Below are positions 5,879-48,291 of a stretch of DNA of 64,000 nt, piece by piece. How positions within the stretch are numbered: position 1 is the first letter of the stretch; the number at the start of each line of letters is the position of its first letter. Where the stretch lies: positions 1 to 64,000 of IMG/VR virus record IMGVR_UViG_3300017987_000001; one strand, given 5' to 3'. The position numbers and the translations under genes were made by a program. Under the pieces are notes generated by a model, which saw only the letters and a program-made list of their open reading frames with translations, did not search any database and had not been told where the DNA came from.

Positions 5879-6133
5879 CTACAGACGACTCAAGGCATCA
5901 CCAACGTTCGCGGCACGCGTGTCCGCACGCGCGCGAGCATCGCGAAAGTCGGCAACCGTTGCGCGATGACGGCAGTTGACGCACTTGCAGCTCGCGTCGA
6001 TGTCGATGGTCACGTTCTGGTACTCGTAGACCGAGCCATTATCCAAGTACAGCTGGGCATGACCCTCGACCAAGAAGCGCCGGTTGTGCCCACACTTGGG
6101 GCACTGCAGGCGCGGCAGACTGTTGAGATCCAT
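5879..6133 (-). CDS. zinc-ribbon protein with C-terminal GDALSRL motif
   Basis: CPKC...CVNC; GAGAGGA SD. Confidence 0.7.
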   Translation of the reverse strand: MDLNSLPRLQCPKCGHNRRFLVEGHAQLYLDNGSVYEYQNVTIDIDASCKCVNCRHRATVADFRDARARADTRAANVGDALSRL

Positions 6134-6143
6134 CAGAGTCCTC

Positions 6144-7193
6144 TCAGCTTGTGATACCCATCTCGTTCTTGACTGCTGCAAGTTCCTCCGCTGCGTCTGC
6201 CGCGCGAAGGGTTCGCAGAAGGAACGAGTACAGCTCCGGTGTCTCTTCACGATTCACCACGCGCCCAAGGCACTGCTCAAGCCCAACCTCGAACTCCGTG
6301 GGTTTGTCGAGCTTGGCATCATCCCTCAGTACGGGCAGGTCGCGGATGCGCAAGTGCACGCTTCGCTCTCGACATGCGTCGCCAAGCCGCTTGTATGCCT
6401 CCGGCACGTCCGGGGACACGCGCGCGAGCATCAACGAATCGACAGCCAGCTCGGTTTCGATCAGCTCGACGGTGGCGTCGAGCGTCTCGGGACTATCGAT
6501 GGTCATGATGCTCGTAGGCCGCCCGTGAATCTTGTGCCGCTTGACGGTCATCTTCTTGCCCGAGTGGTGAACGGAGATGAACGACTTCTGCGGATTCTCC
6601 TTCATCGAGCGAATGTGCGTCGATCCGGAATAGTGGCACTTACCCACGGACGCTTCCACGTGGAGATCGCCAAGCAAAGCGACCTTCACGAAGTCCGGGA
6701 TCCACTCCTCGTCCAGATTCCAAGCACCTTCGATCGACATCACCGACTTCAGCGCCTGATGAAGCATGAGAATGTCGCACTCCTTCAGGGCTTCGAGCTT
6801 CTGCTTCACGTCGTCGGCATGCGTATTGTCGAAGCCGTAGAGCAGGTGATCCTTCCCGTCGAAGTTGAGCGTGATCGGATCGTACCCATCGATCGAACTG
6901 ACCTCCGGCACCAGCTCGAACCACGGAGGGCTGCTGCGATCGTGCTGTCCTTGAATCGCGAGCTTCCGTGTCTTCTTCGGGAGCCGTCCGATCTCGTCCT
7001 TGAATGTCCTAACCGACAAGCTATCCGGCTTGCTCTTGTCGAAGATATCGCCGCCGAGCAGGAGCGCCTCTGCCTTGTTCTTCAGGCAGTAATCGATGAT
7101 CTGATGAAGCGCGTTATACGCGTCGCCGCGCATGTCCGGCAGCTCTGCCCAGATCGTCGGCGACAGGTGGAGGTCGGCAGCGAAGGCGATCAT
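6144..7193 (-). CDS. sbcD: SbcD/Mre11-like metallophosphoesterase nuclease (gp47-like)
   Basis: ADLH, GDIFD, GQHD, LHQ, LGDLH, YSGS motifs; near sbcC. Confidence 0.9.
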   Translation of the reverse strand: MIAFAADLHLSPTIWAELPDMRGDAYNALHQIIDYCLKNKAEALLLGGDIFDKSKPDSLSVRTFKDEIGRLPKKTRKLAIQGQHDRSSPPWFELVPEVSSIDGYDPITLNFDGKDHLLYGFDNTHADDVKQKLEALKECDILMLHQALKSVMSIEGAWNLDEEWIPDFVKVALLGDLHVEASVGKCHYSGSTHIRSMKENPQKSFISVHHSGKKMTVKRHKIHGRPTSIMTIDSPETLDATVELIETELAVDSLMLARVSPDVPEAYKRLGDACRERSVHLRIRDLPVLRDDAKLDKPTEFEVGLEQCLGRVVNREETPELYSFLLRTLRAADAAEELAAVKNEMGITS

Positions 7194-34104: not shown

Positions 34105-35502
34105 TTACGGCATAAACGGGGAATTGAGGCGGTCCTTCTTGACGATAATCGTCTTACCCCACGGAACGATGCTCCGTTCAAACTCGTCCGTGGTCATACA
34201 GTCCTCGGGCAACAACCACAGTGTGGGGAAGCCGTCTGGACTCTTGTCGGGACGGGACGCGGTATACGTGTCCCACCATGACTGGCCGCGCTCTTTCAGG
34301 ATGTTTGCCTTGTACGTGGCGATGGTACCGTAGCCGTCCGTGTAACCGACTATGTAGTGTGGCCTCGGGTGCATTTGTCGAATATGCATGAGGGCACTAC
34401 TGTAGTCGGTCCCACCGCGTCCAAAGAATCGCTCAAGTGGTTCGCCCGGGCGATATGGGTGAACCTTCGCGACACGCGCGTCACTCTGTACGACAGTGAT
34501 CGTCGCGCCCCGCGCACACATGCCCCGAAGTTCGGGGTCAACGAGCTTGAGTTCTTCTGCTCCCATGGACCCGCTGGTATCGATCAAGAATGCTACGCGC
34601 AATCCGCCGGTCCACGTATAGCCGCGATACGCTGGATGGCGCCGCGACGGTCGTCTACGTGTTTCGGTCCGGATCTGATGACTGTGCTGGGTTTCCATAG
34701 CGCGCAAGTGTCTGTACCACGGAACTACCGCGTCCCGCTTGGACGCCTTCATGAGTTGCTCGTGATCAGCACCGAGAGTGCCGCGCCATTTCTTGTGCAC
34801 CTCATCGCCGAACATCTTGAGTGCTTCGGACACCGACGTGATGATGTTCCTCGTGCGTTCGTCTGCGAACGTACCGTCGCTCTCACTGAGGCGGAGCACC
34901 TCACTCATGAGATACGGTACGTTCTTGCCCGGGAATCCATCCGACTGACCTGCAGTGCCAGTCGACAAGGCGGAGTTGGGTGACTGGAATTTCGGAAGCT
35001 TCAGCTTGCCTTCATTGACGAGCGTCTGGATGACTTCTGCATACTGCATTGACGTCATGCCCATCGGCACGCCCTGAAGGTGCTGTAATTGAAAACCTAC
35101 CAACCCCTCTTGCGACAAGTGCGGACTGGGATGCTTCTGGTTGACGTAGACGTCCATCGCTGCGGTTGCGATCTCTGGACCGAATCGATCAATCAGGAAT
35201 CTCCCATAGCTGGTGAAGTGCCCCTCAATGATGTGTGCTGCCTGATGTTCGAGGACTTCCAGCCGTGCTTCGAAGCTCAGCTCCTTCATAATTGGCCAGT
35301 ACAGCGTGATCTGCAATTGGCCATCGACGACGTCACAGCCCGCGTGAATCGGATAGGATCCACTGTAGCCGATCGGTGCCGATGTAGCGACGATATTGAC
35401 GTTGTGCAGGACGTAGCACAGGTCATGCCTCTTCGTCGTTACGAGATAGTAGAGGAGTTCGCTGAGCCAGTTACCGTCACCGCTGTGCTGCTCTGCGTCC
35501 AC
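34105..35502 (-). CDS. DUF2201-type metallopeptidase-like plus vWA domain protein
   Basis: LEHQAAH (degenerate HExxH), RRPSRR, IDTSGSM MIDAS, GRGGTD, TDGYG. Confidence 0.85.
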   Translation of the reverse strand: MDAEQHSGDGNWLSELLYYLVTTKRHDLCYVLHNVNIVATSAPIGYSGSYPIHAGCDVVDGQLQITLYWPIMKELSFEARLEVLEHQAAHIIEGHFTSYGRFLIDRFGPEIATAAMDVYVNQKHPSPHLSQEGLVGFQLQHLQGVPMGMTSMQYAEVIQTLVNEGKLKLPKFQSPNSALSTGTAGQSDGFPGKNVPYLMSEVLRLSESDGTFADERTRNIITSVSEALKMFGDEVHKKWRGTLGADHEQLMKASKRDAVVPWYRHLRAMETQHSHQIRTETRRRPSRRHPAYRGYTWTGGLRVAFLIDTSGSMGAEELKLVDPELRGMCARGATITVVQSDARVAKVHPYRPGEPLERFFGRGGTDYSSALMHIRQMHPRPHYIVGYTDGYGTIATYKANILKERGQSWWDTYTASRPDKSPDGFPTLWLLPEDCMTTDEFERSIVPWGKTIIVKKDRLNSPFMP

Positions 35503-36734
35503 TAGCCGAGTACCTTCTCGAACTTCTTGACGAAGTCGTGGTACACTTTGCCCATCTGCGCGACGACATCCGATTTCTTGAAGACGTCCATGATCGGACT
35601 GCGCACGAATCTGGGCGCGCGATACACCGCATCGCACAACGACGATACGATGTCCGCAGCGTTGTTCAGCATCAGCACCTGACAGAAGCCGGTGAATCGC
35701 TCTCCCGCTTCCGGGTACTGGGTCGTGAACGTGTTGTCGGACTGTGCGATCACGCGAATCACATCGAGCTGCGTCGCACCAATGTATCCGCGTGCCTTGG
35801 TCCCACCACTGAACCAGCGCTGAACACGCTCTAGTTGCGCCGCGAACTGCTCCACGCTACTTCCGAGCAGCTCACGACCGAGAATAGGCACCTTGTCCGG
35901 CTGGTACCCACTCTGAAGGAACGTCAGCAACGGTGGCGAGATCGTATCGTCAATGACCGCTCGTGCGCTCTTGACGATGTTCGCGGCCGATTCGCCAGCG
36001 GCCCGTTGCGCCTCGACATGCACCGCCAACCCCATCCAACCACGCGGTGTGAGCTGGTTGAAGAAGCTGTCGTGGTTGAGGATGAACTGGTAGACCGTCG
36101 GCTTCATGATGATCGACCAGACGGCCAGCAGTTCAGCCTTCTCCGGTACGACGATGTACGGGTGCAGTCGTTCTTCGATCGAGTGGCACAGCTCGGCCTC
36201 AACCGTCGTGTAGTCGGCGGTCAGTGGGTTGCCGGTTGCCACGAGGATGCAGTTGGGGCTTACCTCGCGGTTATTGAACTTGGCCTTTCCCGCCGTCGAG
36301 TCGACGATCTGTCGCAGCTGGTTGAGCACCTTCTTGCTGGCCGTGGGAAGCTCGCTGATCTCCAGCAGCAGCGCTTCCTGTTCGAAGATCGGAAGCATCG
36401 CAGCTTCCATGTTCTCGGTGACCTTCTTGGTGGTCCCGTCCGGATTCGTGACAATCTTGCCCGCTGGGTCGGGAACGCCAAGGTTGTCATCGAAGAGTTG
36501 TGCGTCGGGATCCCAGCGACAGTACGGTATGCCGAGGTCGTCGGCGATGCACGTACACGTTGTCGACTTACCGTCTCCCGACTCACTGAGCATGATCGGG
36601 ATCTTGTTCACCCGTTCGCGCTTCGGCTGGCTCAGCAGGTACTTCGCGTGATTCGTGATCGCTCGGCGAGCGAACCCGAGGCTCACTTGGTACTTGTTCT
36701 GCTGATTCCAGACCGTCGTGAGCAGCCTGCCCAT
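35502..36734 (-). CDS. MoxR-like AAA+ ATPase
   Basis: Walker A SESGDGKST, atypical Walker B LLEISE, VATGNP sensor 1, arginine finger EERL; partner of the vWA gene. Confidence 0.8.
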   Translation of the reverse strand: MGRLLTTVWNQQNKYQVSLGFARRAITNHAKYLLSQPKRERVNKIPIMLSESGDGKSTTCTCIADDLGIPYCRWDPDAQLFDDNLGVPDPAGKIVTNPDGTTKKVTENMEAAMLPIFEQEALLLEISELPTASKKVLNQLRQIVDSTAGKAKFNNREVSPNCILVATGNPLTADYTTVEAELCHSIEERLHPYIVVPEKAELLAVWSIIMKPTVYQFILNHDSFFNQLTPRGWMGLAVHVEAQRAAGESAANIVKSARAVIDDTISPPLLTFLQSGYQPDKVPILGRELLGSSVEQFAAQLERVQRWFSGGTKARGYIGATQLDVIRVIAQSDNTFTTQYPEAGERFTGFCQVLMLNNAADIVSSLCDAVYRAPRFVRSPIMDVFKKSDVVAQMGKVYHDFVKKFEKVLG

Positions 36735-37343: not shown

Positions 37344-37482
37344 AATGTGTGCCTCCTGCTACACTTCCACTAGAGGTCTTTCGCGATACCACGCAGGATG
37401 CTGAGGATGGATCGAAAGTACACACCAACCTTGTCAGCAAAGTTATCCCACATGATTCTGACCCTCCAATTGTACATTATCG

Positions 37483-39303
37483 ATGCACCGAAGGGAAGGC
37501 GTGATGGTAATCACTGAAGCACAGACGCCGCAAGCGCCGAAGTCTGTGGCGGAAGCGATCACCTCGCTTGCCCATCAGTACACGGAGCACACAGTCGACA
37601 CCTTGGTGCCACTGTTGCCCCTTCTGACCTTAAAGGGCGAGCCGTACACGCTCAGTCACCACGCGCCGTTCGAGCCGCTCTTCGATTTGAGCTTGCCCAA
37701 GCGGACGACGTGGAAGACCGGACGGCAGGTCTCGAAGACGACAGGGCTATCGTCGCAGTCGGTCCTTCACTGCGCGATTCAGCCCTACTTCGCCACCCTT
37801 TTCGTGGCTCCACGCTTTGAGCAGATCCGCCGCGTCTCGGCGAACTACGTGAAGCCGTTCATTGAGAACAGCATACTGGACAAACTGATCGCGGGGAAAT
37901 CCGTCGAACGGTCTGTCCTTCAGAAGACCTTCCGCAACGAGGCGCGGATGTACTTCAGCTTTGCGTTCCTCGACGTCGACCGCATTCGTGGTCTGTCCGT
38001 CGACTGCGTGAAGTACGACGAGATCCAAGATATCGATACTGACTTCATCCCGATTATCAAGGAGTGTATGTCCGCGTCGCGCTATGGAATCGAAATGTTC
38101 TTCGGCACGCCCAAGACTCTCGACAACACCATTCAGGTGCTGTGGGAGCGCTCATCGCAGGCCGAATGGGTCACACGATGTCAGGCGTGCAACCACGAGA
38201 ATATTCCGGGGCTTGAGTATCACCTTCTCAAGATGATCGGCCCGCGCGGGCCGGTCTGTGCCAAATGCGGACGTGACATCCAGCCTAGGACTGGGCGCTG
38301 GATACACGCTAACCCCGATGAGCTTCCGTTGAACGTCGGGTACCATGTTCCCCAGATCATCATGCCGATGCACTATGAGGATCTGGACGAACCGTGGAAG
38401 CTACAGGAACATCCTACCGAGAAGTGGTTGGATCTGCTCGGTAAGCGGGAAGGCCGCAACAACTACACTGAGGCCAAGTTCCTGAACGAGGTTTTGGGCG
38501 AGTCATGTGATGTCGGCACCAAACTGGTTACGCTCACCGACATCAAACGCGTCGCCACGTTGAACAAGAACACCGAGAAAGACGCACTTCGCAGCATCCA
38601 TAACTACCTGTACCGGGCCATGGGCGTTGACTGGGGCGGCGGCGGTGAGGACGAAATCTCCTTCACTGTCGTCACCGTCGTCGGCATGAACCCACAGAGC
38701 GGTAAGATGGAGTGCATCTTCGCGAAACGACTACACTTGGGCTACTCCCATATCGAGGAAGCACAGGAGGTGATGCGCCTGTTCAAGGCGTTCCAGTGCC
38801 ACTACTTCTGCCACGATTACGGAGGTTCGGGATCTGTCCGTGAGGCCCTGATGATTCAATCCGGGTTCCCCATAGAGAAGATCCTGCCCTTCATGTACGT
38901 TCGCGCGACCGTGAACAAGATGGTCGAAGCCAAGCGTCCCGGCGGCTTCAACCAACGCGCCTACTACACGGTCGACAAGGCGCGATCGCTGGTCCTGCAG
39001 GCTCAGTGCATCAAGACCCAAGCCATTCAGCTGTTCAAATACGACTCTGAATCGCAGGAAATCCTACACGACCTACTCGCTCTCATTGAGGCCAAGAGCG
39101 AGCGCCCCGGTGCCGCAGACGTATTCCTCATCACGCGCAATGCGAAGATGCCCGACGACTTCGCACACGCTCTGAATTTCGCCTGCATCGGCATCTGGCA
39201 CGTCCACAAAGCGTATCCAGACCTGACAAAGCTCACCCAAATCAAGCTTACGCCCGAGCAGCGGAACTTCGCTGACCCGGTCGTACAGGACTGGAACGAG
39301 TAG
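37483..39303 (+). CDS. terL: terminase large subunit (GpA-like)
   Basis: GRQVSKTT Walker A, RIRG...YDEIQD Walker B, GTPK, CxxC pairs, MGVDWG nuclease, DDFAHA; likely start 37501 or 37504. Confidence 0.9.
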   Translation: MHRREGVMVITEAQTPQAPKSVAEAITSLAHQYTEHTVDTLVPLLPLLTLKGEPYTLSHHAPFEPLFDLSLPKRTTWKTGRQVSKTTGLSSQSVLHCAIQPYFATLFVAPRFEQIRRVSANYVKPFIENSILDKLIAGKSVERSVLQKTFRNEARMYFSFAFLDVDRIRGLSVDCVKYDEIQDIDTDFIPIIKECMSASRYGIEMFFGTPKTLDNTIQVLWERSSQAEWVTRCQACNHENIPGLEYHLLKMIGPRGPVCAKCGRDIQPRTGRWIHANPDELPLNVGYHVPQIIMPMHYEDLDEPWKLQEHPTEKWLDLLGKREGRNNYTEAKFLNEVLGESCDVGTKLVTLTDIKRVATLNKNTEKDALRSIHNYLYRAMGVDWGGGGEDEISFTVVTVVGMNPQSGKMECIFAKRLHLGYSHIEEAQEVMRLFKAFQCHYFCHDYGGSGSVREALMIQSGFPIEKILPFMYVRATVNKMVEAKRPGGFNQRAYYTVDKARSLVLQAQCIKTQAIQLFKYDSESQEILHDLLALIEAKSERPGAADVFLITRNAKMPDDFAHALNFACIGIWHVHKAYPDLTKLTQIKLTPEQRNFADPVVQDWNE

Positions 39304-45634: not shown

Positions 45635-45741
45635 GTGAGTTCATGCCACATCCAGCTGAGTACGTGAAAGAAGATCCACGCACCTAAGATCCAGCCAACC
45701 ACACGGGCCGTCCACGTGTCGGACGCGTCCATCTTGGCCAT

Positions 45742-46032
45742 CTAGACCTCTCGTCGCTGCGTCTTGCCTTTCGGTCCCCGTATGTAGAGGACAAGCTTGT
45801 CGGCCTTCAGCAGCTGCTTCAGCGCCAGCAGCGAGGCTGGCGTTTTCGCGAGCGCAGTACGCACCGCGATGACGGACTGTGAGAGCTTGGCGCGCTTCGC
45901 GCACGTCCCACATCCGCCCTTCTTCTTTCTCATTGCGTTGTAGACGGCCTGTAGCAGCGGTACGCGCTTCCGCGCATTGCTGTCTTTGGCTAGGTTCAGT
46001 AGCGTCGCATCTGATACTGTGACCGTCTTCAT
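45742..46032 (-). CDS. small basic protein with GCGTC motif
   Basis: GGAGG SD; K/R-rich. Confidence 0.65.
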   Translation of the reverse strand: MKTVTVSDATLLNLAKDSNARKRVPLLQAVYNAMRKKKGGCGTCAKRAKLSQSVIAVRTALAKTPASLLALKQLLKADKLVLYIRGPKGKTQRREV

Positions 46033-46055
46033 ATGTATCCTCCGGGGTGGGAAGA

Positions 46056-46083
46056 TGCCCTCGCTCACCCGAGAGCGAGGGCA
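46056..46083 (-). terminator. hairpin at the 3' boundary of the candidate ncRNA
   Basis: TGCCCTCGCTC/GAGCGAGGGCA 11-bp stem. Confidence 0.5.
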
Positions 46084-46086
46084 AAG

Positions 46087-46425
46087 AGACTGCCGACGAA
46101 GGTATGGAGAGAGGGTCCGGGTACCGCACAGAACACCTGTACGAACTAACCGGGAACAATTGGTTAACGATGATCACGAGGGTCGTTCACTCCCTTGGAC
46201 GAACTACCTTCGGGTAAGATAGGCGCCCTGTTCACACCGAACTGCGCTTGAGCCTTCACTTAGTTGTACGCGTCCAACTATCCAGCTCATTGGGTACGCT
46301 GACCCTTGGTTTGCATGTAATCGATGGTACGATCACACACGCAGTCGACTCACCAAGGGCGGTCAAAGCATCACGACCACCTTAACCTTGATCGCTATGT
46401 ACTCCCTCCGGCCATTCGGCAGACT
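46087..46425 (-). ncRNA. candidate large Ro60-associated (Y-like) structured RNA
   Basis: 5'/3' ends pair (CTGCCGA/TCGGCAG; GGAGGGAG/CTCTCTCC); GCCGAATGG at the 5' end; many internal helices; no credible ORF; adjacent to the TROVE gene. Confidence 0.6.
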
Positions 46426-46432
46426 TCCCCCC

Positions 46433-46465
46433 AAAGAAACGGCCCGCGAACGACGCGGGCCGTTT
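46433..46465 (-). terminator. terminator after the TROVE gene
   Basis: AAACGGCCCGCG/CGCGGGCCGTTT stem plus CTTT. Confidence 0.6.
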
Positions 46466-46469
46466 GCTT

Positions 46470-48137
46470 CTACATTTTAGCCGTCAGCTTGTCCAGATCA
46501 ATGGCCTTGATCTGATCGAGCCAGTAATCGGCTGCACGTCCGGCGCTCCAGTCACCGATGTACGTGAAGACCTGATCGGAGAAGCCGCCGATCTGGTACA
46601 CGTCCGGATGATTCTCCGGCATCTGGTTGCTGGTGTTGGCGTACACGTTAATGTTCACCAACTGCGCCTTCGGGTTGCGCTTCTTGTAAGCCGCCCACGC
46701 CGTGGCCATCCCAGTGGCTCGGGAGCCATAGATGGATCCGAACTCGGCGTACGGCGTCTCGACCCACGCCTCGTTGTCCGAGACGTAGATCACCAGATTG
46801 CCCTTGTGCTTCTGGGCGTTCAGGTGCTTCAGCGCGACGGAGCAGTCCGTGCCTCCACCATGGAGCGCCAACTTGCGCGCGTTGGTCATGACCGAATCGC
46901 GCGGGTTGGCGGCAACCCGATGCACGCGCGTGTCGAACGGTACGATCGTCGTGGCGTCCGGGTTCTTGCGCAGCAGCGACGCTGCGACAAGCCCGGCCAC
47001 ATCCACGGCGAGCACCTTCGACGTTGCGCCTCCGCGCATGCCCGTGACAGGCCACGTCATCGATCCGCTCGTGTCAATGCAGACCGCGACGTTACCTTCG
47101 ATCGCCGGAACGTTCTCGCACGCGACTTCCATCGCGTCCTGTAGGGCGTTCGTGATCTTGGTCGGCGCCGAGCCTTCGTTCATCTTGAAGGCCATGAGGA
47201 TCTGGTACGGGAAGACCCGCGCCTTCCGGATCACGTCCGGGTCGCGCAGCTTCGCCGCGATCAGATCCACCATCGCAGGGTCGTTGTAGACCCCGTGACG
47301 GAGCGCCGTCTGCAGGTTCATCCTGCAGAAGTGCCAGCCGCCCTTCTTGAACAGTTCGCCCCATTCCGCCGTCGTCAGCGGGGAGGGGAGGCCGTCGAGC
47401 CGCTGGAACGGAACGGCCGGTACTTCCATGGCCAGTCCGCTCTCGGGCATCTTCGCACCGTTCGCAACCACCTGCTTCATGGCCTTGAACGCTTCGAACT
47501 GCTGAACCAGCTCGGGCAGCTGACTCAGATACTTCGACACCGGATCCCCGTCCTTCTTCAGGAAGTACCTGTAGATGGCCGAGTGCTGCGGCGTCGCGGG
47601 CTTCGGGTGCATCATCGTGATGACGTCCTTCATGGACGGCTTCCCGATGTCCCATCTGAAGAGCATCTCCGGGGACGTCCGGTCGAGCATCTGCTGGAGC
47701 AGACGTCGCGGACGGTGACCGATGTTGTCGCGACCGGTCACGTTGCTCCAGAGGATCTCGAAGAACCTCAGGAACATCTTCCCATTGTCGATGATCTTCG
47801 GGAACGCCTTCTCCAGATGGCGCATTCCCTCATTTCCGAGAGTCGTGAGGTAGCACGCCAGCAACGCTGGCATGTCCTTCATGTACCCTCGCTGACGGGC
47901 GAAGACTGCGATCTTCGCCACTAGTTCAGCTGAGACCTTCGGGAGCAATCCCACGATGGCCTTCAGCTGGTCCTCGGCTGAGCTGTAGTACGCATCACCG
48001 AACGTGCACGTCGCAGCCATCTGCGCCAGTGCCAGTTCGGGCGACAATGCGTACGCAGCTCCCCCAGCCTCGTTGGCTGCGGTTGCCGCCGGTGCAGCGA
48101 ACCCACCTCGCTGCGATCGAAAGACTCGGTTACTCAT
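46470..48137 (-). CDS. rsr: Ro60/Rsr TROVE-domain RNA-binding protein with vWA domain
   Basis: NEAGG.AY, RQRGYMKDMPA, HPKP, RMNL, ARVFPYQ, IDTSGSM, GGGTDCS, SDNE. Confidence 0.93.
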   Translation of the reverse strand: MSNRVFRSQRGGFAAPAATAANEAGGAAYALSPELALAQMAATCTFGDAYYSSAEDQLKAIVGLLPKVSAELVAKIAVFARQRGYMKDMPALLACYLTTLGNEGMRHLEKAFPKIIDNGKMFLRFFEILWSNVTGRDNIGHRPRRLLQQMLDRTSPEMLFRWDIGKPSMKDVITMMHPKPATPQHSAIYRYFLKKDGDPVSKYLSQLPELVQQFEAFKAMKQVVANGAKMPESGLAMEVPAVPFQRLDGLPSPLTTAEWGELFKKGGWHFCRMNLQTALRHGVYNDPAMVDLIAAKLRDPDVIRKARVFPYQILMAFKMNEGSAPTKITNALQDAMEVACENVPAIEGNVAVCIDTSGSMTWPVTGMRGGATSKVLAVDVAGLVAASLLRKNPDATTIVPFDTRVHRVAANPRDSVMTNARKLALHGGGTDCSVALKHLNAQKHKGNLVIYVSDNEAWVETPYAEFGSIYGSRATGMATAWAAYKKRNPKAQLVNINVYANTSNQMPENHPDVYQIGGFSDQVFTYIGDWSAGRAADYWLDQIKAIDLDKLTAKM

Positions 48138-48263
48138 TCTGCCCTCCTCTCGAATAGCAGACAAAGCACGCGCTCGAAATGAGCGCATGGCGAACCGGGT
48201 CCAACATATAGTAACGCGATATGGGCCTGTTTTAACCCCGGCCTAGGGCGTTCCACGGGTGTC

Positions 48264-48291
48264 AGATTACAGCAAGTAGGTTGCTTGTCAA
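48264..48291 (-). promoter_or_regulatory. putative promoter of the TROVE gene, giving a structured leader of about 120 nt
   Basis: TTGACA-16 nt-TAATCT. Confidence 0.4.

What the first reader, a model, noticed from the sequence alone, without database searches (positions are those of the whole stretch)
46087..48137. Phage Ro60 with an unusually large (~340 nt) Y-like structured RNA
Seen: immediately downstream of the TROVE gene, between two strong hairpins (46437-46465 and 46056-46083), lies a non-coding stretch whose ends pair (CTGCCGA 46422-46416 with TCGGCAG 46096-46090; GGAGGGAG 46409-46402 with CTCTCTCC 46113-46106). It begins GCCGAATGG. Internal helices include GTGGTC/GACCGC, CCCTTGGT/ACCAAGGG, TGTGATCG/CGATTACA, TAGTTG/CAACTA, TGAGC/GCTCA, TACC-CGAA-GGTA, TAACC/GGTTA and GTACAG/CTGTGC. 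Known: bacterial Y RNAs are encoded next to rsr, carry a GNCGAAN(0-1)G-type motif in the Ro-binding stem, are much shorter, and YrlA types mimic tRNA. Inference: a new Y RNA class with a Ro-binding stem and a large, ornate effector domain lacking a canonical TTCRA T-loop, possibly tethering Ro60 to an unknown partner or acting as a decoy for host anti-phage RNases.
Basis: partly seen in the sequence, partly recalled or inferred. Interest (0 to 1): 0.8.

Follow-up and report, generated by a model that had tools for sequence, protein, structure and literature searches.

The report
Oversized Y RNA beside phage Ro60
A jumbo phage carries a Ro60 gene followed by a 335-base RNA whose two ends form the signature Ro60-binding stem of bacterial Y RNAs, but whose middle is a roughly 280-base insert with no known relative, about three times larger than typical Y RNAs.

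Summary
A Ro60/TROVE gene (46470-48137, minus strand) sits in a 208-kb phage contig. It is followed by a 340-nt ORF-free stretch bounded by two strong hairpins.

These ends are a full bacterial Y-RNA Ro60-binding module. They carry GCCGAAUG, a 7-bp stem 1, and an 8-bp stem 2 with the family's G.U wobble in register. UACAU follows stem 2, and a YUU(C)G-UCG 3' strand closes the module.

I surveyed 126 Ro60 loci and found 201 unique, un-nested modules (median 115 nt, 95th percentile 148 nt). The window's 335-nt RNA is the third largest.

Relatives with the same gene order carry other large Y-like RNAs of about 245 and 375 nt, each followed by a GC-rich hairpin. Their inserts show no sequence similarity to this one.

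The weak part is the 'ornate effector domain':
- The insert has no homologue in any locus I could reach.
- It has no Rfam hit and no tRNA-like element.
- No RNA-seq run was listed.
- Its folding energy is only modestly better than that of other genome windows.

Verdict: a credible new size variant of Y RNA. Its middle is unvalidated.

Separately, the Ro60 mRNA leader holds a covarying, RBS-sequestering hairpin that resembles Y-RNA stem 1 and includes the start codon. This may be an autoregulatory site.

The parts
46470..48137 (-). Ro60 / TROVE (Rsr-like) gene, 555 aa
   Evidence: Pfam vWA_Ro60 and TROVE. PHROG 850. PDB 2NVO, 9KOP and 9L5Y. 44.9% identical to the Myxococcus phage Mx1 TROVE protein. 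More than 6000 homologues found.
46437..46465 (-). 12-bp GC-rich hairpin followed by UUUCUUU, between the Ro60 stop codon and the RNA. Terminator-like; read-through or processing would be needed if the RNA is co-transcribed.
   Evidence: -24.1 kcal/mol, z -5.8. Weak Rfam terminator-type matches only.
46090..46422 (-). Large Y-like RNA: 333 nt from the first to the last base of stem 1, about 335-346 nt with flanking pairs (46430-46085).
   Evidence: Module scan. Pair probabilities. Shuffle control. Profile score above 5000 decoys.
46413..46420 (-). GCCGAAUG, which matches the GNCGAAN(0-1)G motif. The CGAA core is at 46418-46415.
   Evidence: Sequence. Motif definition in PMC4201824. CGAA point mutants weaken phiLo Ro60 binding to Yrl2 3-4 fold (PMC12135203).
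46416..46422 (-). Stem 1, 5' strand (CUGCCGA). It pairs with 46096-46090 (UCGGCAG), which is preceded by CCUUCG.
   Evidence: p = 0.99.
46397..46409 (-). Stem 2, 5' strand (GGAGGGAG, 46409-46402) plus the conserved UACAU (46401-46397). Stem 2 pairs with 46113-46106 (CUCUCUCC). The G.U wobble is the 4th pair from UACAU, as in 49 of 61 small Y RNAs.
46114..46396 (-). 283-nt insert in place of the apical loop. Predicted elements: a 22-bp long-range helix (46396-46372 with 46178-46155), a distal multi-branch region with hairpins at 46340-46313 and 46289-46249, and a 3' arm hairpin at 46153-46117.
   Evidence: Thermodynamic prediction only. No homologue, no Rfam match, no repeat elsewhere in the window.
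46056..46083 (-). GC-rich hairpin without a U tract, a few nt after the RNA's 3' strand. Equivalent hairpins follow the large Y-like RNAs of L007, L008 and L009.
45742..46032 (-). Conserved 96-aa ORF of unknown function (CGxC motif), syntenic in relatives.
   Evidence: 55% identical to L009:5475-5762. Homologues P0122 and P0123. AF2 pLDDT 85 with no PDB fold match.
48135..48165 (-). Ro60 translation-initiation hairpin: UUUG (48165-48162), UCUGC (48161-48157), a loop holding the GGAGG RBS (48147-48143), GCAGA (48142-48138) and AUG (48137-48135). It has the same closing pairs and flanks as Y-RNA stem 1, in circularly permuted order.
   Evidence: Alignment A4. RNAalifold predicts it independently. 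4 of 7 pairs change on both sides; 89% paired against <=51% for slid controls. It sits at the start codon only in this clade plus L050.
48167..48189 (-). Upstream leader hairpin, which covaries in the clade. It lies inside a conserved ~150-nt leader that runs from a TTGACA box (48291-48286) through GCGTTACTATA (48217-48207).

Best explanation
The stretch 46422-46090 (minus strand) encodes a Y RNA of the bacterial YrlA/YrlB lineage that is the partner of the phage's own Ro60.

Shown:
- Its 5' and 3' ends form the family's two-stem Ro60-binding module. The order is stem 1, GNCGAAUG, stem 2 with the conserved G.U, then UACAU on the 5' side, and stem 2', YUU(C)G and stem 1' on the 3' side.
- The short apical hairpin of YrlB, or the tRNA-like domain of YrlA, is replaced by a roughly 280-nt insert.

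Inferred:
- The RNA is made either by read-through of the hairpin after Ro60 or from a sigma-70-like site inside the end of the gene (46501-46474).
- The GC hairpin at 46083-46056 defines or protects its 3' end.
- Ro60 binds the module through the CGAA-containing 5' strand, as shown for other Ro60/Y pairs.
- The long rod and distal branches then gate the Ro60 ring or tether it to another factor, by analogy with the Ro60-Y RNA-PNPase complexes of Deinococcus, Salmonella and Thermus phage phiLo.

Relatives of this phage keep a large Y-like RNA between Ro60 and the next downstream gene while the insert sequence differs between them. The size of the RNA is therefore probably a lineage trait rather than an accident of this one genome.
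For: - Module in the right place and on the right strand. It occurs once in the window, against 0.02 per 64-kb strand in shuffles.
- The module agrees column by column with 61 small Y RNAs collected next to Ro60 genes: the A-U and G-C closing pairs, the G.U wobble in register, and UACAU.
- An HMM of the 5' half has its best hit in the whole window at 46420-46397.
- The spliced module scores above all 5000 composition-matched decoys.
- Stem probabilities are 0.99 and 0.94 in every context tried.
- The stretch is non-coding.
- Ro60 is intact and is an orthologue of proteins known to bind such RNAs (PMC4201824, PMC12135203).
- Gene order is conserved on both sides with L009. There a 375-nt Y-like RNA occupies the same position.
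- L007 and L008 have a 245-nt Y-like RNA starting at the Ro60 stop codon.
- All four large RNAs are followed by a strong GC hairpin.
- The contig of the 56%-identical Ro60 P0003 also has a 395-nt gene-free gap at this position.
Against: - No expression data: no RNA run was listed.
- No homologue of the insert exists, so there is no covariation for about 85% of the molecule.
- The MFE is only in the top 10% of same-size windows of this genome.
- Rfam YrlA and YrlB do not match, and my own covariance model cannot span the insert.
- The window's module is the only one of 215 with G instead of C after AUG. It has the rarer UUCG linker, seen in 6 of 215.
- The closest relative with DNA (L006, 61% Ro60 identity) has an ORF, not an RNA, directly after Ro60.
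- The family alignment was gathered with a scanner that demands pairing, so its paired fraction is partly circular.
Confidence: 0.68

Rival explanations
1. This is a small YrlB-type Y RNA gene whose apical loop was invaded by unrelated DNA, either a mobile or palindromic element or simple spacer expansion. The insert would then be neutral baggage rather than an effector domain, and the RNA may be impaired or only tolerated.
For: - In another locus (L060) a Y module encloses a near-perfect long palindrome (z -15.9), a clear insertion event.
- The inserts of window, L009 and L007/L008 share no sequence.
- The MFE is modest relative to the genome.
- The module carries two unusual letters.
Against: - The insert is not repeated elsewhere in the window.
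- It is not palindromic.
- It matches no intron, IS or other Rfam family.
- Three lineages of the same clade keep 245-375-nt versions with the same 3' hairpin arrangement. This argues for maintenance of a large RNA.
Confidence: 0.17
2. The insert is a self-splicing or host-processed intervening sequence. It would be removed to give a conventional small Y RNA.
For: Phage structured-RNA genes such as tRNAs often carry group I introns (general knowledge). The insert sits exactly in the apical loop.
Against: No match to any intron family, nor to any other Rfam family in the insert, at E<=10 with permissive filters. No recognisable P1/omega-G arrangement was sought or seen.
Confidence: 0.05
3. There is no RNA gene. 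The stretch is an ordinary intergenic spacer or 5' UTR of the next ORF between two terminators, and the resemblance to a Y RNA is chance.
For: No expression evidence. No Rfam hit. A GC hairpin lies on each side.
Against: - Shuffle expectation is 0.02 per strand.
- None of 5000 decoys reaches the module's profile score.
- The position is next to Ro60 on the same strand.
- Large Y-like RNAs occupy the same position in relatives.
Confidence: 0.05

Closest known systems
YrlB (Rfam RF02565) and the small hairpin-type bacterial Y RNAs (S. Typhimurium YrlB, M. smegmatis YrlB, D. radiodurans Yrn2)
   Same: - Encoded beside Ro60 on the same strand.
- Stem 1 with GNCGAAUG, an internal loop, stem 2 ending in GGGNN-UACAU, and a 3' strand NNCUC...YUUG-UCG.
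- A rod-like continuation after UACAU.
- Relatives L008 and L013 give sub-threshold YrlB hits of 33 and 30 bits.
   Different: - 335 nt against 60-80 nt.
- The apical loop is replaced by a roughly 280-nt multi-helix insert.
- G instead of the otherwise invariant C after AUG, and a UUCG linker.
- No Rfam hit.
YrlA (Rfam RF02553), the tRNA-like Y RNAs of more than 250 bacteria and 22 phages (PMC4201824)
   Same: The same Ro60-binding module, with an effector domain inserted at the same point.
   Different: No T-arm, D-arm, TTCRA loop or tRNA-model match. About three times longer. In this locus it appears to be the only Y RNA, whereas characterised species have at least two, one of them tRNA-like.
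Thermus phage phiLo Ro60 with Yrl1/Yrl2 (PMC12135203)
   Same: A phage-encoded Ro60 with phage-encoded CGAA-motif RNAs next to the gene. That paper proposes hijacking of host PNPase.
   Different: The phiLo RNAs lie upstream of the gene and were picked by the authors as conventional stem-bulge-stem Y-like RNAs. The Ro60 proteins are only about 22% identical.
Large Y-like RNAs found here in relatives: L009 4990-5364 (375 nt), L007 2064-2307 and L008 4629-4875 (~245 nt), L099 6210-6535 (326 nt)
   Same: The same closing module and the same position downstream of Ro60. L009, L007 and L008 also share a GC hairpin right after the 3' end. L009 shares gene order on both sides.
   Different: No sequence similarity in the inserts. 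L099 contains three T-arm-like hairpins and one D-arm-like hairpin, so it is a multi-tRNA-like type.
Large ornate phage-associated RNAs (ROOL, GOLLD, raiA, OLE, HEARO)
   Same: Size range and phage or metagenome setting.
   Different: No match to any Rfam family in this stretch at E<=10. Those RNAs are not closed by a Ro60-binding module.

Membership tests
Bacterial/phage Y RNA (YrlA/YrlB lineage, Chen et al. 2014) | Encoded within about 4 kb of a Ro60 orthologue, on the same strand | tested here: met
   The RNA starts about 50 nt after the Ro60 stop codon, on the minus strand.
Bacterial/phage Y RNA (YrlA/YrlB lineage, Chen et al. 2014) | GNCGAAN(0-1)G motif near the 5' end, in the 5' strand of the terminal stem | tested here: met
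   GCCGAAUG at 46420-46413. Motif as defined in PMC4201824.
Bacterial/phage Y RNA (YrlA/YrlB lineage, Chen et al. 2014) | 5' and 3' ends pair into a two-part stem interrupted by an internal loop. As seen in my 61-sequence alignment: invariant A-U and G-C closing pairs, a G.U wobble in stem 2, UACA(U), and YUUG before the 3' strand. | tested here: met
   Deviations: AUGG instead of AUGC (1 of 215) and UUCG instead of YUUG (6 of 215).
Bacterial/phage Y RNA (YrlA/YrlB lineage, Chen et al. 2014) | Score above the Rfam gathering threshold for YrlA (69 bits) or YrlB (97 bits) | tested here: not met
   No hit even at E<=10. The positive control, the Salmonella locus L002, scores 105.5 and 70.9 bits. 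The 283-nt insert exceeds what these models, and my model R1, can span, so the failure is expected and says little.
Bacterial/phage Y RNA (YrlA/YrlB lineage, Chen et al. 2014) | Stable RNA that is bound by, and depends on, Ro60 | not testable with these tools
   No RNA run was listed. Testing needs immunoprecipitation, EMSA or Northern blotting.
YrlA subtype | tRNA-like domain (T-arm with a UUCRA loop, D-arm) | tested here: not met
   No tRNA-model or ARAGORN hit. No TTCRA anywhere in the RNA (sequence).
YrlB subtype | Short hairpin RNA of about 60-80 nt with a small apical loop | tested here: not met
   335 nt. The 61 small modules found here are 60-80 nt.
Known large structured RNAs (ROOL, GOLLD, raiA, OLE, HEARO, group I/II introns, tmRNA, RNase P, 6S) | Covariance-model match | tested here: not met
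   Nothing at E<=10 in 45900-46600 on either strand apart from terminator-hairpin look-alikes.

The most novel reading that the evidence does not exclude
A clade of jumbo phages shares the gene order glycosyltransferase, ~110-aa ORF, Ro60, ncRNAs, ~95-aa ORF. In this reading the clade has remodelled the Ro60/Y system in two ways.

1. The Y RNA rod has been expanded into 250-390-nt multi-branched, non-tRNA-like RNAs. These act as lineage-specific adaptors that bring Ro60 to host or phage partners.

2. Ro60 synthesis is feedback-controlled. Free Ro60 binds a hairpin in its own mRNA that copies Y-RNA stem 1 (UUUG-UC...GA-AUG), hides the ribosome-binding site and uses the start codon as the AUG of the GNCGAAUG motif. 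The Y RNA would then set Ro60 output by competing for the protein.
Probability: 0.25. Interest if true: 0.75.

Novelty: new variant of a known kind. Interest (0 to 1): 0.55.

Why it matters
Y RNAs are thought of as roughly 70-130-nt RNAs. Their variable half decides what Ro60 is tethered to: PNPase in Deinococcus, Salmonella and phage phiLo.

A 335-nt Y RNA with a non-tRNA-like, multi-helix variable half, plus 245- and 375-nt counterparts in related phages, would widen the known size and architecture range of the family. It would also point to partners other than those recruited by tRNA mimicry during phage infection.

The survey shows that the Rfam Y models miss most of the family. It found 201 unique, un-nested modules, up to six in tandem per locus, almost none of which reach the Rfam thresholds. 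It also yields a simple, specific signature for finding them.

The Y-like hairpin over the Ro60 start codon, if real, would be the first proposed autoregulatory circuit for a Ro60 gene. It can be tested directly with a reporter fusion.

Tried and rejected
- Rfam at the gathering threshold on the window, and at E<=10 on 45900-46600: only terminator-type look-alikes.
- blastn against phage genomes in distant mode: no match.
- Exact-pattern and protein scans of IMG/VR: only the contig itself plus relatives no more than 46% identical.
- Metagenome scan with a clade alignment: 80 loci, none closer than 51%.
- blastn and nhmmer of the RNA against all 126 loci: only self, plus one 28-nt hit to the 5' motif of a bacterial Y RNA.
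- The closest Ro60 relatives. P0003 (56% identity, with a syntenic 395-nt gap) has no DNA available. L006 (61%) has an ORF after Ro60 and the contig then ends. L012 and L013 are cut short.
- Homologues of the downstream 96-aa ORF: two Logan contigs without DNA and with too little upstream sequence. One IMG/VR contig (L128) is cut 192 nt upstream and shows T-arm-like hairpins instead.
- Other assemblies of the same phage: identical over 3.1 kb.
- Sequencing runs: four DNA runs hold the phage, no RNA run was listed, and a relative about 93% identical in run X8 has no contig over the RNA.
- Covariance model R1 built from 61 small Y RNAs: it cannot span 335 nt and returns only generic hairpins.
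- Mini Y-like match at 37398-37440(+): z -0.15, dismissed as chance.
- GTTACTATA as a repeated phage promoter: it occurs only once in the window.
- Structure of the 96-aa ORF: confident model, no PDB fold match. PHROG and Pfam give nothing for the small neighbours.
- The Annual Review on bacterial Ro60 (PMC10870794) is not held.
Full report
**What the window is**

The window is the first 64 kb of IMG/VR contig IMGVR_UViG_3300017987_000001, which is 207,857 bp long. It encodes a terminase large subunit (37483-39303), tail-fibre-like proteins and six tRNAs. The same phage turns up, base for base, in sediment and seawater assemblies.

The gene at 46470-48137 (minus strand) is a full-length Ro60 orthologue:
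- Pfam vWA_Ro60 and TROVE and PHROG 850.
- Sequence matches to the solved structures of D. radiodurans Rsr and Thermus phage phiLo Ro60.
- 44.9% identity to the TROVE protein of Myxococcus phage Mx1, and about 45% to Salmonella Rsr.

**The observation**

- The two flanking hairpins are strong: -24.1 and -23.9 kcal/mol, z about -6.
- The two closing helices have pair probabilities of 0.99 and 0.94. These do not change when 440, 610 or 900 nt of context are folded.
- GCCGAAUGG starts at 46420.
- No minus-strand ORF longer than 36 aa lies wholly inside the stretch; the only longer frame overlapping it is the GTG-started upstream extension of the next gene (45641-46177).
The main difference is a 22-bp long-range helix (46396-46372 with 46178-46155) that continues the rod beyond UACAU.

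**What it is**

Reading the loci of the nearest Ro60 relatives showed obvious small Y RNAs. One example is GGCGAAUGCUCGCAGGGAUUACAU...CUCUGCAAUUCUUGUCGCC in L008. Rfam scores these below threshold as YrlB, at 33 and 30 bits.

From these and Salmonella YrlA/YrlB (the positive control) I derived a signature. The 5' side is stem 1 ending in (C/G)GA, then AUG(C), then stem 2 ending in GGGNN, then UACA(U). The 3' side is the stem 2 partner NNCUC, a 4-9-nt linker ending in YUUG, and the stem 1 partner starting with UC.

I scanned 126 Ro60 loci.
- The scan gave 215 unique modules in 85 loci, up to six in tandem; 201 of them enclose no other module.
- An alignment of the 61 smallest shows changes on both sides in 13 of 15 pairs, and 96% of cells paired against at most 49% for slid controls.
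- It also shows a G.U wobble conserved in 49 of 61 sequences.
- The scanner itself requires pairing, so the paired fraction is partly circular. The diversity of pair types is not.

The window's RNA fits this module position by position, including the wobble as the fourth pair from UACAU. The supporting numbers are:
- The module is expected 0.02 times per 64-kb strand by chance and occurs once, right after Ro60.
- A profile of the 5' half has its best hit in the whole window there.
- The spliced module outscores 5000 decoys.

It has two deviations. It is the only one of 215 modules with G rather than C after AUG, and it uses the rarer UUCG linker.

**Size and relatives**

Among 201 un-nested unique modules the median length is 115 nt and the 95th percentile is 148 nt. 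Seven are 231 nt or longer. The window's 335 nt ranks third.

The other long ones are heterogeneous:
- L060 (389 nt) encloses a near-perfect palindrome and is clearly an insertion.
- L099 (326 nt) contains three T-arm-like hairpins.
- L009 (375 nt) and L007/L008 (~245 nt) are multi-branched and not tRNA-like.

These last three belong to the window's own Ro60 clade (50-53% identity) and share its gene order: glycosyltransferases, a ~110-aa ORF, Ro60, then non-coding RNAs. In L009 the flanking small ORFs are homologous on both sides, at 55% and 34% identity. The 375-nt and 335-nt RNAs are therefore positional counterparts.

In all four cases a 10-13-bp GC-rich hairpin without a U tract follows the RNA within a few bases. 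When L009 is folded with the module enforced (-153.3 against -157.4 kcal/mol unconstrained), it also continues as a long-range helix after UACA. The architecture is shared: module, rod extension, distal branches, 3' hairpin. The insert sequences are not.

**What remains unproven**

The middle 283 nt have no homologue anywhere I could reach, no Rfam relative, no tRNA-like element and no second copy in the window. All independent assemblies of this phage are identical. A relative about 93% identical is too thinly covered, and no RNA run was listed.

The MFE z-score of -3.1 against shuffles shrinks to -1.4, rank 56 of 554, against real windows of the same genome after GC correction. So the 'ornate effector domain' is a thermodynamic prediction only. 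The alternative that it is tolerated insert DNA cannot be excluded. It is made less likely by the persistence of large versions in three lineages.

**Mechanism**

*Shown:* a Ro60 gene lies next to an RNA with the family's binding module.

*From the literature:* the GNCGAA motif overlaps the sequences needed for Rsr binding (PMC4201824). Each base of CGAA contributes 3-4 fold to phiLo Ro60 binding to Yrl2, and that RNP recruits host PNPase (PMC12135203).

*Inferred:* the phage Ro60 binds the module, and the long rod and distal branches gate the ring or tether it to a partner. Because the RNA lacks tRNA mimicry, the partner or mode may differ from YrlA. Transcription may come from read-through of the 46465-46437 hairpin or from the sigma-70-like site at 46501-46474. 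The ends are not determined.

The ~150-nt Ro60 leader is conserved across the clade. It ends in a hairpin that encloses the GGAGG ribosome-binding site. The hairpin's stem is UCUGC/GCAGA in the window, UCUAUGG/CCAUAGA in L007 and L008, and UCCAUG/CAUGGA in L009, L012 and L013.
- 4 of 7 pairs change on both sides, and 89% of cells are paired against at most 51% for slid controls.
- RNAalifold finds the hairpin unaided.
- Its invariant closing pairs (U-A, C-G) and flanks (UUUG before, AUG after) are those of Y-RNA stem 1 in circularly permuted order. The AUG is the Ro60 start codon.
- It occurs at the start codon in the clade and in one other locus out of 107.

I read this as a possible Ro60 operator that mimics the Y RNA. 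It could equally be an ordinary RBS-sequestering hairpin. I found nothing on Ro60 autoregulation in the paper library.

**Verdict**

The RNA is best filed as a new, oversized, non-tRNA-like variant of the known bacterial/phage Y RNA kind. It is probably a trait of a small jumbo-phage clade. The Ro60-binding end is well supported and the large middle is unvalidated.

Noticed in passing
window 48135-48165 (-), with L006-L009, L012, L013 (alignment A4): A covarying hairpin hides the Ro60 ribosome-binding site. It has the same closing pairs and flanks as Y-RNA stem 1 (UUUG-UC...GA-AUG), and the AUG is the start codon. It may be a Ro60 autoregulatory operator that mimics the Y RNA.
   Followed up: partly
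window 48166-48291 (-): The conserved Ro60 leader has a TTGACA box, invariant blocks GGAACG and GCGTTACTATA (the latter unique in the window), and a covarying hairpin at 48189-48167. Its function is unknown.
   Followed up: partly
126 Ro60 loci (L014-L126): Y-RNA modules occur in tandem arrays of up to six per locus and fall into two size classes, 60-80 and 100-150 nt. They share a conserved G.U wobble and UACAU. Rfam YrlA and YrlB gave no hit at gathering threshold in the 20 viral loci tested, and only sub-threshold YrlB hits in the clade relatives.
   Followed up: partly
L060:5290-5678: A Y module encloses a near-perfect long palindrome (MFE -177 kcal/mol, z -15.9). It looks like a mobile or palindromic insertion into a Y RNA gene.
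   Followed up: no
L099:6210-6535 (IMGVR_UViG_3300034782_000062): A 326-nt Y module contains three T-arm-like hairpins and one D-arm-like hairpin, so it is a multi-tRNA-like Y RNA. No tRNA model hits it at gathering threshold.
   Followed up: no
L008:5000-5260 and L009:4600-4985: Further structured-looking non-coding stretches lie between Ro60 and the next ORF. L008, for example, has closing complementarity CAGCUGUGCGGCG...CGCCGCACAGCUG without a Y module. L008 also has a third small Y RNA at 6083-6153.
   Followed up: no
L001:6085-6264 (Myxococcus phage Mx1, OR576727.2): A degenerate Y-like 5' motif (UUCGGAAUGCGGUGGGACGUACAG) has a matching stem 2 partner and lies directly upstream of the annotated tRNA-Gly. 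The record does not annotate it.
   Followed up: no
L095-L115 (IMG/VR jumbo-phage loci): In many jumbo phages Ro60 sits inside tRNA gene clusters. One locus (L113) also has a tmRNA next to it.
   Followed up: no
L002, L003 (OR845705.1, OR851267.1): These GenBank records are labelled Escherichia and Salmonella phage (UNVERIFIED_ORG). They are fragments of the enterobacterial rsr-yrlB-yrlA-rtcB operon, so they are probably host DNA.
   Followed up: no
L128:1-192 (IMGVR_UViG_3300009149_007827): Upstream of a 55%-identical homologue of the window's 96-aa ORF lie two T-arm-like hairpins inside a GGGCGGC...GCCGCCC stem. The contig ends there.
   Followed up: no
window 34105-35637 (-): A 510-aa protein matches PHROG 1314 ('HNH endonuclease'). 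The vWA region of Ro60 also hits this family weakly, so this may be a second vWA-containing protein.
   Followed up: no
window 37398-37440 (+): A short stretch upstream of the terminase gene resembles a mini Y module (GCUGA-GGAUGG...UACAC...CCUUG-UCAGC). Its folding z-score is -0.15, so I take it as chance.
   Followed up: yes
window 45710-47235, run X8: A relative about 90-96% identical to this phage exists at roughly 2x depth in a 2023 metagenome. Deeper assembly would give the first sequence variation for the RNA.
   Followed up: partly
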